From Paramoeba atlantica (lineage: Eukaryota; Protista; Discosea): a stretch of DNA of 64,000 nt. The DNA lies in the NCBI GenBank assembly GCA_977017575.1, contig CDRNVI010000044.1, positions 744,001 to 808,000 on the forward strand, in the 5' to 3' direction. Below, piece after piece: positions 7,004 through 47,859 of this stretch. The position numbers were made by a program, and so were the translations under genes. Under the pieces are notes generated by a model that was not told where the DNA came from, searched no databases, and was given only the letters and a program-made list of their open reading frames with translations. Positions within the stretch are counted from its first letter, which is position 1, and each line of letters starts with the position of its first letter.

Positions 7004-7033
7004 AAAGATACAGTTTCTGTACCTTGTTGGTAC
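7004..7033 (+). ncRNA. 5'-truncated spliced-leader exon (last 26 nt) plus GT donor
   Basis: AAAGATACAGTTTCTGTACCTTGTTG|GTAC matches the conserved kinetoplastid SL core CAGTTTCTGTAC-TTTATTG|GTA with two substitutions. There is no AACTAA-type 5' end upstream. Confidence 0.75.
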
Positions 7034-7319
7034 ATTTTCCTTTAGTTCATCTTTTCTTTCCCCGGCAACGAGCACAGTTTTACTGTTTATATGCCCGTTG
7101 CCGGCCGGCACTAAGGCCGAAACTGTCCCTCTTTCTCGGCGAAGTAGGGGACGCGCTTCCACCCCATCACCCCTCCCCGGCTCACTCTTTGAGTGGGTTT
7201 TCTTCCCTCCCCGGCTTTCTTCCCTTCGCGCCCTTTCCTTCCCGGGGAGCCATGCGCCATGGTGGCCTCCCTTGAGCACCACTGGGCGTGGCTCTGCCTC
7301 GTCTTATCGCGAGGCAGCG

Positions 7320-7462
7320 GTCGGTTGCAGTGCGCCCCTCCGGCTGCGTAAAGAGGTGGTGAGTTGCCTGGACCACCTCTACCGACTGGGGCTGAGTCGG
7401 TTGCAGTGCGACTCTCCGGCTGCGTAAAGAAAGGGCGAGTTGCCTGGACCCCCTCTACCGAC
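7320..7462 (+). repeat. Tandem duplication (period 76) of a 67-nt three-way-junction module inside the SL-headed element
   Basis: GTCGGTTGCAGTGCG...TACCGAC starts at 7320 and again at 7396. The 47.4 kb copy has a single module. Confidence 0.9.
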
Positions 7463-8209
7463 AGAGTCCGTGCTAATCCCCTTGGTGCGACATCCGTCAT
7501 TACGGATTGTGCCGATGATATCGGCTGTCGCATCAAGGGCTGTATCTCTGCGCCACCGAGCGCATGAACATCAAAACTCTTAGGAGGGCGGGACAGACTT
7601 CTGAGGAGGAGTGTACGTTACGTTATTGGAGGAGTAGGCTCACTAAATTCAAGCCTAAATTCAAAGACTAGAGAAAATATTATGCACCTCCCACTAATAG
7701 TGCAGCGAGTTTTCGCTAAACGGCACTACATTATATAAGTAATCATATTTGTATAAAAATATTTTTAATCGAAATGTTTTAAATTTTTAAAAAAGAACAG
7801 TAAATGGTAAAACGTAGATTCTGTGACATAAACATGCTGATGGACACTCGCAGCATCTTGCACTCACACATTAGATATTAAGTTTGAATACTTAGTAATT
7901 ATTCAATGCACAAAAAAAGACTACATTGAATGAATATACAAACTCTATTTCCTAGAAACAAGAAATATGTTTCGTCTTACTATGCACAAGACCAAAAACT
8001 GTACCCAAAGTTTACTAAAAGCGTGACTACGAAGGCAGTAATAATTGTCAAGCTCATGGTACTGTTCCATATCTATTTAAAAGAAATAAATGAGATTCGG
8101 GGCGCCTGACGGTTTCAAGAATTTTCGTTTCCATAGCATAAGAAAAGTGACGCGGCAGTGACATTGTGCTTTCACAGCACTGGAACGATCATTGAGCTAA
8201 ATGAAGCAC

Positions 8210-31175: not shown

Positions 31176-31631
31176 TAAATAAAATTAGCATCAAAAGAAA
31201 ATGAACCTTGATTCATGTAGAAAGAGGTCAAGAATGTCCGTTATAATGAAATTTGCAAAATCGAGGATTGATGAAAAAGTGAGTCTACATAATCTATATA
31301 TTGCCCCTTTTACTCTTGCTAGATGATCTAACAAGATTAATCTCTGCACTTTTAGTGCATGACTATCAAAAAATGATCTAACAAGCAATATCTAACTTAG
31401 ATCTTACTTCATGTTCAGGACCATTAGATAAATTACGCTGTTCCCTTAAGTAAACATTTTAACTATTTCCTCTATACACCTTTCTCAAAGTTAACGGACA
31501 TCTAAATAGAATTACAAAAACGTTCTGTGGTTGCATAGATCAGTCGTCGTTGGATGGCCTTCATTGATAAAATAAAAGATTTTAAGTCTTATTTTAAGAT
31601 TTTAAGTCTTATTGAAATATCTTATCGAGAC

Positions 31632-39947: not shown

Positions 39948-40739
39948 GAAATTCAAGAAAAACTACACCTGTGGCTAGAAATAAGTTAAGTCTGATGTGG
40001 ATTTCAAGAAAACTCTTTCATAGACGATATAATACACAAACAATATACAACGTGAACGACATAATATACAAATGGATATACAAATGGATATACAAATTCG
40101 CAAGTACTGTAAACCCCATGGTTATTTGTCACACGTTACCCCCCCCTAGTTATCTGTCACTTTTGGTGGAATCTCCCTTTTCTAGGTGTCAAATTGTGGC
40201 ACACCAGGTTGACAAAAGGTTGTTTGTTCATACAGGGCAGTACCTGTAGAGATAATTAGGTCGAGCAGGGGTAAGCGCAATCAACGCTCCCTGCTGGACC
40301 TTTACGCCTTCCGAGGCAACACAGGGAAAAGCGCGGGATATCCTCCCCAGGAAAGCGAAAAGAGACGGCCTCATCGGGATAAGAAGTCCCGAGATGTTTC
40401 GTAAGCGCAGTGCGCCAGGAAAGATATACGGATTTGTGGGACGCGGATGATATTCCCATCGTACATGCTACAAATGACTTCCATGGTTCATGATACAACA
40501 TGGTCAGGGCCATGGATGCATGCTGGCAAATGGAGTCATGGTTCATGATGCATCATAGGTATCGGGGTCCCACAGAATCCGCCACGGCTGGTGAGCAAGA
40601 GAGGTGCATAGAACATCCTCTAGAACACGCATACAACGTGTTTGCTCGCCGTGTGGGAGACTTCCGGTATATGGAAGCCTCCTACGCGCAGAAGTACCGG
40701 TGTCGCCGGATAGTGAAGGCACGCCGCGTGGTCCCGTAG

Positions 40740-40951
40740 TAGGGTCCTGCAGCGCATGGGGACTCGGAACCGTGTTCCGAGCGGGGAGCTGGGAGATGAG
40801 GGAAGGGAGGCGCACCCCTACTTTGCGACAAGCGGGACAGTTCCTCTCCTAGCGCCATCCGGAAACGGGCATTGACATTGTAAAAATATGCCCGTTTCCG
40901 GGAGAGAAAAGATGAGCTAGGAAAAAAAGTACCAACAAGGTACAGAAACTG
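40740..40951 (-). mobile_element. SL-headed element, diverged subfamily B (5' portion recognisable)
   Basis: Minus strand reads CAGTTTCTGTACCTTGTTG|GTAC (40951-40929), then a pyrimidine tract, the hairpin CCGGAAACGGGCAT...ATGCCCGTTTCCGG and AACTGTCCC...AAGTAGGGG blocks, all colinear with subfamily A. Confidence 0.72.
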
Positions 40952-47362: not shown

Positions 47363-47859
47363 GTTTTGATGTTCATACGCTCGTTGGCGCAGAGATACAG
47401 CCCTTGATGCGACAGCCGATATCATCGGCACAATCCGTAATGACGGATGTCGCACCAAGGGGATTAGCACGGACTATGTCGGTAGAGGGGGTCCAGGTAA
47501 CTCGCCCTCTCTTTACGCAGCCGGAGGGGCGCACTGCAACCGACCGCTGCCTCGCGATAAGACGAGGCAGAGCCACGCCCAGTGGTCCTCAAGGGAGGCC
47601 ACCATGGCGCATGGCTCCCCGGGAAGGAAAGGGCGCGAAGGGAAGAAAGCCGGGGAGGGAAGAAAACTCACTCAAAGAGTGAGCCGGGGAGGGGTGATGG
47701 GGTGGAAGCACGTCCGCTACTTCGCCGAGAAAGAGGGACAGTTTCGGCCTTAGTGCCGGCCGGCAACGGGCATATAACAGTAAGACTATGCCCGTTGCCG
47801 GGGAAAGAAAAGATGAACTAAAGGAAAATGTACCAACAAGGTACAGAAACTGTATCTTT
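47363..47859 (-). mobile_element. SL-headed structured element, subfamily A, copy 2 (497 bp)
   Basis: Reverse complement of 7004-7577 with scattered substitutions and one fewer 76-bp module. The SL part is 47834-47859. Confidence 0.75.

What the first reader, a model, noticed from the sequence alone, without database searches (positions are those of the whole stretch)
7004..7577. Dispersed, highly folded ~0.5 kb element headed by the spliced-leader exon: candidate SL-derived SINE or non-autonomous partner of a CRE retrotransposon
Seen: copies at 7004-7577 (+) and 47363-47859 (-) with unrelated flanks, plus a diverged relative at 40740-40951 (-). Each begins with the SL 3' exon and donor (…CAGTTTCTGTACCTTGTTG|GTAC). 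The sequence then turns into a pyrimidine tract and a chain of hairpins unlike a typical SL intron, with no meaningful ORF. One copy interrupts a pogo relic, so the unit is mobile. Known: SLACS/CZAR/CRE1 insert near SL nt 11-12 with target duplications of a few tens of bp, and SLACS transcripts start at the SL promoter and so carry SL sequence at their 5' end. Inference: a non-autonomous SL-headed retroposon family that has escaped the SL array. An alternative reading is an antisense element whose A-rich 3' tail abuts an SL target. I know of no described SL-headed SINE in kinetoplastids.
Basis: partly seen in the sequence, partly recalled or inferred. Interest (0 to 1): 0.9.

Follow-up and report, generated by a model that had tools for sequence, protein, structure and literature searches.

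The report
Spliced-leader-headed hitch-hiking retroposon family
This is a young, mobile, non-coding ~0.57 kb retroposon of a kinetoplastid-type protist; it starts with part of the cell's own mRNA leader and ends with the same small RNA hairpin signal as a group of reverse-transcriptase elements, so it most likely spreads by borrowing their machinery.

Summary
Copies A (7004-7577 +) and B (47363-47859 -) belong to a dispersed family. Its 27-nt 3' motif has 83 hits, and 30 sampled copies average 98.4% identity to their consensus. The wider superfamily has about 190 long-form and 27 short-form members. The 26-mer is exactly nt 13-38 of the organism's true spliced leader (SL), read from the tandem SL/5S arrays.

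The "donor" is just GTA: the real intron runs GTATGAGAAG, and no promoter-bearing SL gene continues with GTAC. Short-form copies carry the SL joined exactly 3' of an internal AG, in at least four subfamilies, which points to trans-splicing of the template RNA.

The 3' end is ATCTCT, a covarying 4-bp hairpin, ATGA and an A-rich tail. The 3' UTRs of LINEs with a restriction-like endonuclease (R2/CRE-type architecture) end the same way, so those LINEs are the likely mobilisers.

Empty sites show insertion with a 1-4 nt deletion and no regular target duplication. Copies are not in SL genes.

Two things remain open: the source of the long-form SL|GTAC junction, and why heads start at SL nt 11-13.

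The scan has met this family before on other DNA (s1-392757, s1-386268). No RNA reads could be obtained.

The parts
7004..7577 (+). Copy A, full-length long-form element (574 nt); antisense to the surrounding minus-strand gene cluster
   Evidence: It is 96.5% identical to the family consensus. It is duplicated with its flanks on contig C70. All ORFs >=250 aa in the window are on the minus strand.
7004..7029 (+). Head: exact copy of spliced-leader exon nt 13-38
   Evidence: The true SL exon was read from the tandem SL/5S arrays. There are 778 genomic copies of this 26-mer with at most 1 mismatch.
7030..7045 (+). Leader segment GTAC + pyrimidine run + TAG; its AG (7044-7045) is the alternative SL-addition point seen in short-form copies
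   Evidence: Alignment. 27 genomic copies have the SL joined directly 3' of this AG, in at least 4 subfamilies.
7062..7104 (+). Conserved 13-bp hairpin near the 5' end
   Evidence: 95% of cells paired across 10 family and sister sequences. One pair covaries, A-U 6 / C-G 4.
7320..7462 (+). Two tandem ~76-nt units (7320-7386 and 7396-7462, 90% alike); copy B has one
   Evidence: self-BLAST.
7478..7539 (+). Long 3' hairpin preceding the terminal module
   Evidence: Folds. The partner LINE 3' UTRs have a long hairpin at the same place.
7540..7577 (+). 3' terminal module: ATCTCT (7544-7549), 4-bp hairpin (7550-7553 with 7560-7563), ATGA (7564-7567), A-rich end
   Evidence: Shared with three LINE 3' UTRs and the sister families. 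28/28 cells are paired, all 4 pairs covary, and 0/500 shuffles reach this. Covariance model R1 hits only element ends.
47363..47859 (-). Copy B (497 nt, one tandem unit), inserted in a TIR element
   Evidence: Empty sites exist in the C70 duplicate and in about 20 paralogues. The insertion replaced 1 nt and made no TSD. The GAT just upstream of the head is target sequence.
40218..40951 (-). Copy C: complete ~735-nt member of a sister family (head from SL nt 20, same hairpin 1, own version of the 3' module)
   Evidence: (R1 hit at 40219-40257, minus strand).
31336..31373 (+). 38-nt 5'-truncated copy holding only a 3' module of this group, flanked by a 12-bp target duplication (31324-31335 and 31374-31385)
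   Evidence: R1 hit of 34.2 bits. Sequence and coordinates.

Best explanation
The unit is a non-autonomous (SINE-like) retroposon. Its template is a structured non-coding RNA that carries the cell's spliced leader (SL) at its 5' end. Its last ~35 nt (ATCTCT, a small hairpin, ATGA, an A-rich end) mimic the 3' UTR ends of a group of LINEs with a reverse transcriptase (RT) and a restriction-like endonuclease (RLE).

Shown:
- It is mobile and young.
- It shares the 3' module with those LINEs.
- It shares with the LINE copies examined an SL head that mostly starts at SL nt 11-13.
- It inserts outside SL genes, with 1-4 nt deletions or short, irregular duplications.
- In 27 superfamily members the SL is joined exactly after an internal AG.

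Inferred:
- The LINE protein recognises the 3' module in trans and copies the RNA by target-primed reverse transcription.
- The SL head is put on by trans-splicing.
- The loss of SL nt 1-10/12 happens at each integration. My preferred route is that the nicked top strand, often ending ...(G)AT, primes on the matching GAT at SL nt 10-12 of the cDNA.
- The GTAC after the SL is the first bases of the acceptor exon, not a splice donor.
For: Family and mobility:
- Searches give the copy numbers. Copies average 98.4% identity to consensus, up to 99.8%.
- Empty sites exist for copy B and for L017.
- A 38-nt truncated copy has a 12-bp TSD.

Real SL and a different intron.

3' module:
- ATCTCT and ATGA are invariant, and the stem covaries across the 574 family, sister families and three LINE 3' UTRs whose ORFs are 42-57% identical.
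- Model R1 gave 34 hits in 205 kb. All lie at ends of such elements, including a fourth LINE copy about 100 nt past its ORF end.

LINE type: RT; alignment to R2 proteins through residue 1597; CCHC at 1426-1443 and RPD...E at 1498-1515.

Trans-splicing:
- Short-form junctions lie right after the YAG in at least 4 subfamilies.
- Relict-SL double heads occur, including one superfamily member.

Head start at nt 11-13:
- In 32 family copies the head starts at nt 3-15, with a mode at 11-13. The examined LINE heads start at nt 11, one at nt 6.
- Some copies reach nt 6, and a sister-family copy reaches nt 3, so the RNA carried more SL than most copies keep.
- Copy B's nearest relative (4 differences) has a head from nt 6.
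- The GAT upstream of copy B's head is target-derived.
Against:
- No headless source with AG|GTAC was found in any subfamily form. Yet the SL|GTAC junction and a perfect SL are kept in subfamilies 20-25% apart. Trans-splicing cannot re-create that junction from an SL-headed DNA copy.
- In L017 the AT before AAAG is not in the empty site, so the microhomology idea does not fit every copy.
- The LINE C-terminus alone gave no match to solved structures, so the RLE call rests on motifs.
- 3' sharing is by architecture and short motifs, not long sequence identity.
- The LINE clade was not placed by phylogeny.
Confidence: 0.7

Rival explanations
1. The SL head is an inherited, functional DNA module rather than a fresh trans-spliced tag. 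Active copies would be SL-headed DNA copies whose transcripts begin at or are processed to about SL nt 11-13. An internal promoter or a 5' processing signal would do this, comparable in role to Pr77/L1TcRz of L1Tc. Selection, or RT copy-choice onto the SL of other mRNAs, would keep the head identical to the SL.
For: - No AG-bearing headless source exists in the assembly.
- The SL|GTAC junction is conserved in 189 copies across diverged subfamilies.
- Autonomous LINE copies of the same group also start at SL nt 11.
- Stuttered ATAAAGAT repeats upstream of heads all begin at nt 11.
- Pr77 is a known internal promoter at the 5' end of trypanosomatid retroposons (PMC1874656, PMC8190864).
Against: - Heads reaching nt 3-10 exist.
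- Short forms need a fresh SL, yet 3 of 3 checkable ones still have truncated heads.
- Copy B's upstream GAT is target sequence.
- No promoter test was possible.
- Copy A lies antisense to its gene cluster.
Confidence: 0.17
2. One reading: the family descends from a variant SL RNA gene. SL exon, true GT donor and a long diverged intron would be transcribed from an SL promoter and retroposed, having escaped the array.
For: - GTA follows the exon as in the true gene.
- The junction is conserved.
- Each SL/5S array unit contains a relative of the element.
Against: - Only 3 nt match the intron.
- All 34 promoter-bearing SL genes continue GTAT, and no copy has the promoter plus GTAC.
- The array relative is headless and antisense to the SL gene.
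- There is no Rfam hit.
- The SL is joined at nt 38 to many unrelated sequences elsewhere.
- Short forms sit right after an AG.
Confidence: 0.05
3. The head is a target-site relic of a CRE/SLACS-type, SL-gene-specific ancestor. SL nt 12-41 would be the piece of SL gene downstream of the insertion point (or a target duplication), carried along by read-through.
For: - The head start (nt 11-13) coincides with the insertion point reported for CRE/SLACS/CZAR, between SL nt 11 and 12 (own knowledge; PMC12278014 says only that they share one relative position in SL genes).
- GTA equals intron nt 1-3.
- The partner LINEs are RLE-type.
Against: - In the filled-versus-empty comparisons the head arrives as part of the insertion.
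- Heads from nt 3 and nt 6 exist.
- Heads of most families end exactly at nt 38.
- No interrupted SL gene is seen: 34 of 34 promoter-proximal SL genes read through to GTAT.
- No homology to the SL unit beyond the exon on that strand.
Confidence: 0.06
4. An antisense element whose A-rich tail abuts an SL target, or simply the ordinary SL repeat or a segmental duplication.
For: - Both strands fold equally well.
- Copy A is segmentally duplicated.
Against: - Orientation is fixed by the LINE ORF sense, the 3' module, G-U pairs on the + strand and the truncated copy with a TSD.
- There are at least 30 different flanks.
- The SL unit is a different 2557-bp repeat that also carries a 5S gene.
Confidence: 0.01

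Closest known systems
RIME / NARTc / SIDER, the non-autonomous partners of ingi / L1Tc in trypanosomatids
   Same: Short (0.26-0.55 kb), non-coding, dispersed retroposons of kinetoplastids that share terminal sequence with an autonomous LINE and depend on it. Lengths are from my own knowledge; see PMC1874656, PMC2323293 and PMC3820030.
   Different: Those belong to the APE-type ingi clade. They start with the 77-79-nt Pr77 signature, end in poly(A) and make regular TSDs. This family starts with SL nt 11-13 to 38, has no poly(A), ends in a hairpin module, shows no regular TSD, and its partner is RLE-type.
CRE1 / CRE2 / SLACS / CZAR (CRE clade)
   Same: Kinetoplastid LINEs with RT plus an RLE motif and a link to the spliced leader (PMC12278014). 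Their reported insertion point, between SL nt 11 and 12 (own knowledge), matches where the heads here begin.
   Different: CRE elements sit inside SL RNA genes, usually have a poly(A)-type 3' end and make TSDs of tens of bp. Here 0 of 31 copies are in SL genes, the SL genes are intact, the tail is a hairpin module, and TSDs are absent or short. Clade membership of the partner LINEs was not tested by phylogeny.
R2 SIDEs and stringent-type SINE/LINE pairs such as UnaSINE1/UnaL2 (own knowledge)
   Same: Non-autonomous elements mobilised because their 3' end carries the structured RNA signal that the LINE reverse transcriptase recognises. Integration by R2-type enzymes gives small deletions or duplications.
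   Different: Those have Pol III-derived or ribozyme-bearing 5' ends. None is known to me with a spliced-leader head. Binding of the module by the LINE protein is inferred here, not shown.
DinoSL-tagged retrogenes and relict spliced leaders of dinoflagellates
   Same: DNA copies of trans-spliced RNAs are marked by a DNA-encoded SL at the 5' end. Re-expression adds a new SL at an AG inside the old one (PMC6050394, PMC5585692). Double heads of that kind occur here too.
   Different: Those are mostly protein-coding retrogenes with no dedicated LINE-type 3' signal. This is an amplified non-coding family with a partner-specific 3' module, in a kinetoplastid-type genome.

Membership tests
Classical SINE | Head derived from a Pol III gene (tRNA, 7SL, 5S) with an internal promoter | tested here: not met
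   No tRNA found. No Rfam family at gathering score, nor at E<=10 on the element. The head is SL exon nt 13-38.
Classical SINE | 3' end shared with a partner LINE | tested here: met
   ATCTCT-hairpin-ATGA module shared with three or four RLE-LINE 3' UTRs, with covariation.
Classical SINE | Short, non-coding, dispersed, many copies | tested here: met
   574 nt with no ATG ORF of note. 83 to 189 copies by pattern. Flanks are unrelated.
CRE clade and its dependants | Site-specific insertion in SL RNA genes at one fixed position | tested here: not met
   0 of 31 copies lie in SL genes. Empty sites are a TIR element and unique DNA. All 34 promoter-proximal SL genes read through intact.
CRE clade and its dependants | Partner encodes RT plus a C-terminal CCHC and restriction-like endonuclease | tested here: met
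   RVT_1. Alignment to R2 proteins up to residue 1597. CCHC at 1426-1443 and RPD...E at 1498-1515 by inspection. The C-terminus alone found nothing in the PDB.
CRE clade and its dependants | RT groups with CRE1/SLACS/CZAR in a phylogeny | not tested
   No named CRE reference sequences were available. The homologue search returned unnamed proteins.
CRE clade and its dependants | Poly(A)-type tail and TSD of tens of bp | tested here: not met
   The tail is CATCAAAA(C). TSD search: mean 3.7 nt against 2.9 in shuffles. Deletions of 1 nt and 4 nt at empty sites.
SL RNA gene | Upstream promoter, full 38-nt exon, conserved intron start GTATGAGAAG, tandem array with 5S | tested here: not met
   Array unit read. 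The element shares only exon nt 13-38 plus GTA. No promoter+GTAC copy exists.
Retro-copy of a trans-spliced RNA (as DinoSL retrogenes) | SL exon fused exactly at its last base to downstream sequence; junctions fall 3' of AG; variable 5' truncation of the SL | tested here: met
   Junction at nt 38. 27 short forms lie right after the YAG. Heads start from nt 3 to 20. The AG for the long form itself was not found.
Retro-copy of a trans-spliced RNA (as DinoSL retrogenes) | Poly(A) tail from a mature mRNA | tested here: not met
   Only 3-7 A at the end.
Internally deleted LINE derivative (RIME / SIDE type) | Both termini are the termini of the autonomous element | tested here: inconclusive
   3' end: same architecture and short motifs, different stems. 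5' end: same SL head, and TTCATCTTTT is shared with the p60-family 5' UTR. The full long-form leader was not found on the LINE.

The most novel reading that the evidence does not exclude
A retrotransposon system wired into trans-splicing. RLE-type LINEs and their hitch-hiker would get their capped 5' end from the cell's spliced leader instead of a promoter. The leader's GATAAAGAT stretch (nt 10-18) would then serve as the built-in landing or priming segment for joining the 5' end. That would be a relaxed descendant of the CRE/SLACS habit of cutting SL genes at nt 11/12, now working at GAT-like nicks anywhere in the genome. Old copies would be recycled through re-splicing at internal AGs.
Probability: 0.3. 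Interest if true: 0.8.

Novelty: new variant of a known kind. Interest (0 to 1): 0.62.

Why it matters
Kinetoplastid retroposon biology is built on ingi/L1Tc with their Pr77 head and on CRE elements locked into SL genes. In the papers I could search I found no non-coding family that carries the spliced leader itself as its head and a LINE-type hairpin as its tail.

It would link three things:
- how promoter-less elements obtain a capped RNA in an organism with polycistronic transcription;
- how RLE-type enzymes pick templates by a small covarying 3' signal;
- how SL-specific CRE elements may relate to dispersed relatives.

The family also gives dated markers of retroposition: long, short and double-headed forms. 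With them one could measure recycling of trans-spliced RNAs into the genome, a process so far documented mainly in dinoflagellates.

Tried and rejected
Nothing can be said about transcripts.
After that only pattern counts and coordinates were used, and all genome searches are now spent.
- Rfam and the tRNA scan found nothing. The body has no known RNA ancestor.
- Regular TSDs: not present.
- Headless source gene with AG|GTAC: none.
- Promoter-bearing SL+GTAC gene: none.
- The SL-array relative as an active source, tested as SL joined after its first AG: none.
- A 5.2-kb tandem composite and a locus on C11 share only the last 116 nt of the element and hold no LINE. They were rejected as the autonomous partner.
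- An SL-like fragment in L057 is an SL pseudogene, not an element head.
- The L063 LINE+574 arrangement was first read as a LINE 3' UTR. It was rejected because nine other copies, 96-99% identical over the same 0.57 kb, lie away from every listed element copy, and the junction sequence is unique to this locus.
- The GATTGGAT shared upstream of copy B and the L063 copy was tested as 5'-flank transduction. Only these two copies have it and they are not close relatives, so it is left as chance or target preference.
- The terminal redundancy ACATCAAA (note s1-403776) is found only at copy A and its duplicate.
- Naming the LINE clade or the organism failed: the homologue searches returned unnamed proteins or only the query itself.
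- The LINE C-terminus alone found nothing in the PDB.

Full report
**What is there**

Copy A (7004-7577, +) and copy B (47363-47859, -) align over their whole length. B lacks one of two 76-nt tandem units. Both begin AAAGATACAGTTTCTGTACCTTGTTG followed by GTAC, and both end CATGAACATCAAAA(C). Their flanks are unrelated.

The window is G000:C44:744001-808000 of a 45.7-Mb assembly. A BLAST of copy A against that genome gave at least 40 full-length copies at 93-99% identity, with sharp ends at 7004 and 7576/7. A 27-mer from the 3' part occurs 83 times. Thirty distinct copies average 98.4% identity to their consensus (best 99.8%) and fall into at least two subfamilies, so the family is young.

The element folds far better than shuffled sequence on either strand: z = -7.0 and -6.7. 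It has no ATG ORF of note.

**The leader is real, the donor is not**

The genome holds tandem arrays with a 2557-bp unit. Each unit has a full SL gene: a 38-nt exon, AACTTTAACGAT followed by the 26-mer AAAGATACAGTTTCTGTACCTTGTTG, and then an intron that starts GTATGAGAAG. Each unit also has a 5S rRNA gene. The element's 26-mer is exactly exon nt 13-38.

After the exon only GTA agrees with the true intron. All 34 SL genes that keep the promoter-proximal sequence continue GTAT; none continues GTAC. The same SL is found joined at nt 38 to many unrelated sequences: the 26-mer has 778 copies, and the copies that keep nt 7-38 are followed by GAT, GTT, GCT, GGA or GGT. A GT after the SL is therefore expected in some families by chance.

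**Evidence that the head comes from trans-splicing**

Sister subfamilies are 75-87% identical in the 5' 200-300 nt. They keep SL|GTAC, then a pyrimidine run, then YAG. That long-form junction occurs 189 times.

In 27 further copies, from at least four subfamilies, the SL is joined directly to the base after that YAG: SL|TTCATC, SL|CTCATC, SL|TTAATC and SL|CCCTTC (one example is aligned). A junction that always falls just 3' of an AG is what alternative trans-splice acceptors give.

Genome-wide there are also 14-17 heads in which a complete SL end is followed by a second SL from nt 23, that is, after the CAG of a relict SL. Two more continue from nt 17. One of these double heads belongs to this superfamily (C37:314227-314262). 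This is the relict-SL pattern described for dinoflagellate retrogenes (PMC6050394).

**The partner**

Where an RT hit lay near a copy, I found LINE copies with ORFs of up to 1612 aa that start with SL nt 11-38 and a short 5' UTR.

The 1612-aa protein has RVT_1. It aligns with R2 proteins from residue 863 to 1597. It carries a CCHC knuckle at 1426-1443 and RPD...E at 1498-1515. That is the architecture of LINEs with a restriction-like endonuclease (RLE). No APE domain was reported by Pfam. Clade membership (CRE or other) was not tested.

The 3' UTRs of three such LINE families, whose ORFs are 42-57% identical, end in the same way as the 574 element and its sisters. Each has a long hairpin, then ATCTCT, a 4-6-bp hairpin, ATGA and an A-rich end. 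In a 7-sequence alignment, ATCTCT and ATGA are invariant. All 4 stem pairs show compensatory changes, 28 of 28 cells pair, and no shuffle of 500 reaches this. G-U pairs fall on the + strand.

A covariance model of this module found 34 sites in 205 kb, searched on both strands. All are at ends of family members, sister elements or LINE copies. They include three sites that were not used to build the model:
- a fourth LINE copy, about 100 nt past its ORF end;
- the 3' end of copy C;
- a 38-nt fragment at window 31336-31373 flanked by a 12-bp target duplication.

This is the usual sign that a short element is mobilised by a LINE that recognises its 3' end, and it fixes the orientation.

The element body is 96-97% identical next to LINEs that differ by about 50% in protein. 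It is therefore an independent unit, not those LINEs' own 3' UTR. It lies directly behind LINE 3' ends in four independent places, which suggests tail-nesting or template jumping.

**How it integrates**

Copy B is absent from the segmental duplicate of this region on C70 and from about 20 paralogous copies of the TIR element it interrupts. In all of them the two flanks are contiguous with a single base between them. One such empty site that I hold reads ...TTAGAT G ATTGAT..., whereas the filled site reads ...TTGGAT|AAAG...AAAAC|ATTGAT.... So one base was lost and nothing was duplicated. The GAT that seems to extend the SL head is target sequence.

A second empty site (L017, a 98% paralogue) shows a 4-nt deletion, with AAAAT added before AAAG. 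Across 31 copies, TSDs are not a regular feature, although a few exist at 6-13 bp. This fits R2-type integration better than APE-type integration.

**The head start**

In 32 family copies the head begins at SL nt 3-15, with a strong mode at 11-13. The examined LINE heads begin at nt 11, one at nt 6. A few copies reach nt 6, and one sister-family copy with its duplicate reaches nt 3. Copy B's closest relative, with 4 differences, has a head from nt 6.

Short forms must have received a fresh, full SL. Three of three that could be checked still lack nt 7-12. The shortening is therefore made anew at each event.

My preferred explanation is that the nicked top strand, often ending T, AT or GAT, primes second-strand synthesis on the matching GAT at SL nt 10-12. 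This fits copy B, the extra AAAGAT unit in L012 and the TSD-bearing copies. It does not fit L017. The coincidence with the CRE/SLACS/CZAR insertion point (SL nt 11/12, own knowledge) is striking but unexplained.

**What remains open**

I found no headless source in which GTAC is preceded by AG. I also found no SL-type gene with GTAC. Trans-splicing cannot re-create SL|GTAC from an SL-headed DNA copy, yet that junction and a perfect SL persist across diverged subfamilies. Either the sources are missing from the assembly, or the head is inherited and maintained. I give the latter 0.17 as a rival.

**Limits of the evidence**

No RNA data could be obtained. After that only pattern counts and coordinates were used, and all genome searches are now spent.

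**Earlier notes of this scan**

Two follow-ups on other DNA of the same genome describe the same family: s1-392757 (a 557-base form that shares both ends with an RT element) and s1-386268 (the true leader gene has a different intron). My results were obtained independently here and agree with both.

**Literature**

Searches found no description of an SL-headed non-autonomous family in kinetoplastids.

Noticed in passing
L052 718-1080 (G000:C107, every SL/5S array unit; also the C97, C11, C74 and C24 units): Each 2557-bp SL/5S repeat unit carries a headless, internally shortened relative of the element. It matches element positions 52-205, 266-306 and 475-571 at 81-88% identity. It is antisense to the SL gene, in the same sense as the 5S gene, and directly preceded by (CT)31. 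It could be an old insertion homogenised through the array, or an ancestral source.
   Followed up: partly
window 31324-31385: A 38-nt fragment consisting only of a 3' module (ATCTCT-hairpin-ATGA-A7) lies between two copies of the 12-bp TGATCTAACAAG. It is an extremely 5'-truncated retroposition event of this LINE group.
   Followed up: yes
genome-wide, e.g. G000:C16:34348-34373 and C37:314227-314262: 14-17 heads have a complete SL end followed by a second SL from nt 23, and 2 continue from nt 17. These are relict spliced leaders, showing that SL-headed DNA copies are re-expressed, re-spliced and retroposed again. The pattern is known from dinoflagellates.
   Followed up: partly
window 1-64000 versus G000:C70 about 213500-255300: The window region has an inverted segmental duplicate on contig C70 at 97-99% identity. 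Copy A is shared and copy B is not, so B inserted after the duplication.
   Followed up: partly
L056 1158-1320 and 6376-6540; L057 5764-5920: The last 116 nt of the element (96% identity) are attached to unrelated upstream sequence inside a 5.2-kb tandem composite. An SL fragment that starts at SL nt 23 (TTTCTGTACCTTGTT) follows after a 19-nt spacer.
   Followed up: no
L004 1440-2300: One copy sits inside a long (TG)n tract that directly follows a LINE 3' end. Together with the (CT)31 in the SL array, this hints at an association with dinucleotide repeats.
   Followed up: no
L060 6864-6905; L063 3360-3400; L010 and L012 just upstream of the copies: Upstream of several heads there are stuttered partial heads (ATAAAGAT repeated two or three times, or ATAAAGATACAGTTTCT once more). 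All begin at SL nt 11.
   Followed up: partly
L054 3440-3900 (G000:C11; also C24): Some array units hold a 297-bp mini-duplication of the SL gene with its upstream region. The second exon carries a GTACC-to-GTCCC change.
   Followed up: no
whole genome G000: There are at least 1851 first-look RT candidates in 45.7 Mb. There are 778 copies of SL nt 13-38, against 34 SL genes that keep their promoter-proximal sequence. This is an unusually retroposon-rich kinetoplastid-type genome.
   Followed up: partly
G000:C74:106886-121492: Two neighbouring SL array units are about 7.3 kb apart instead of 2.6-2.7 kb, which suggests 4.7-kb insertions between intact SL genes.
   Followed up: no
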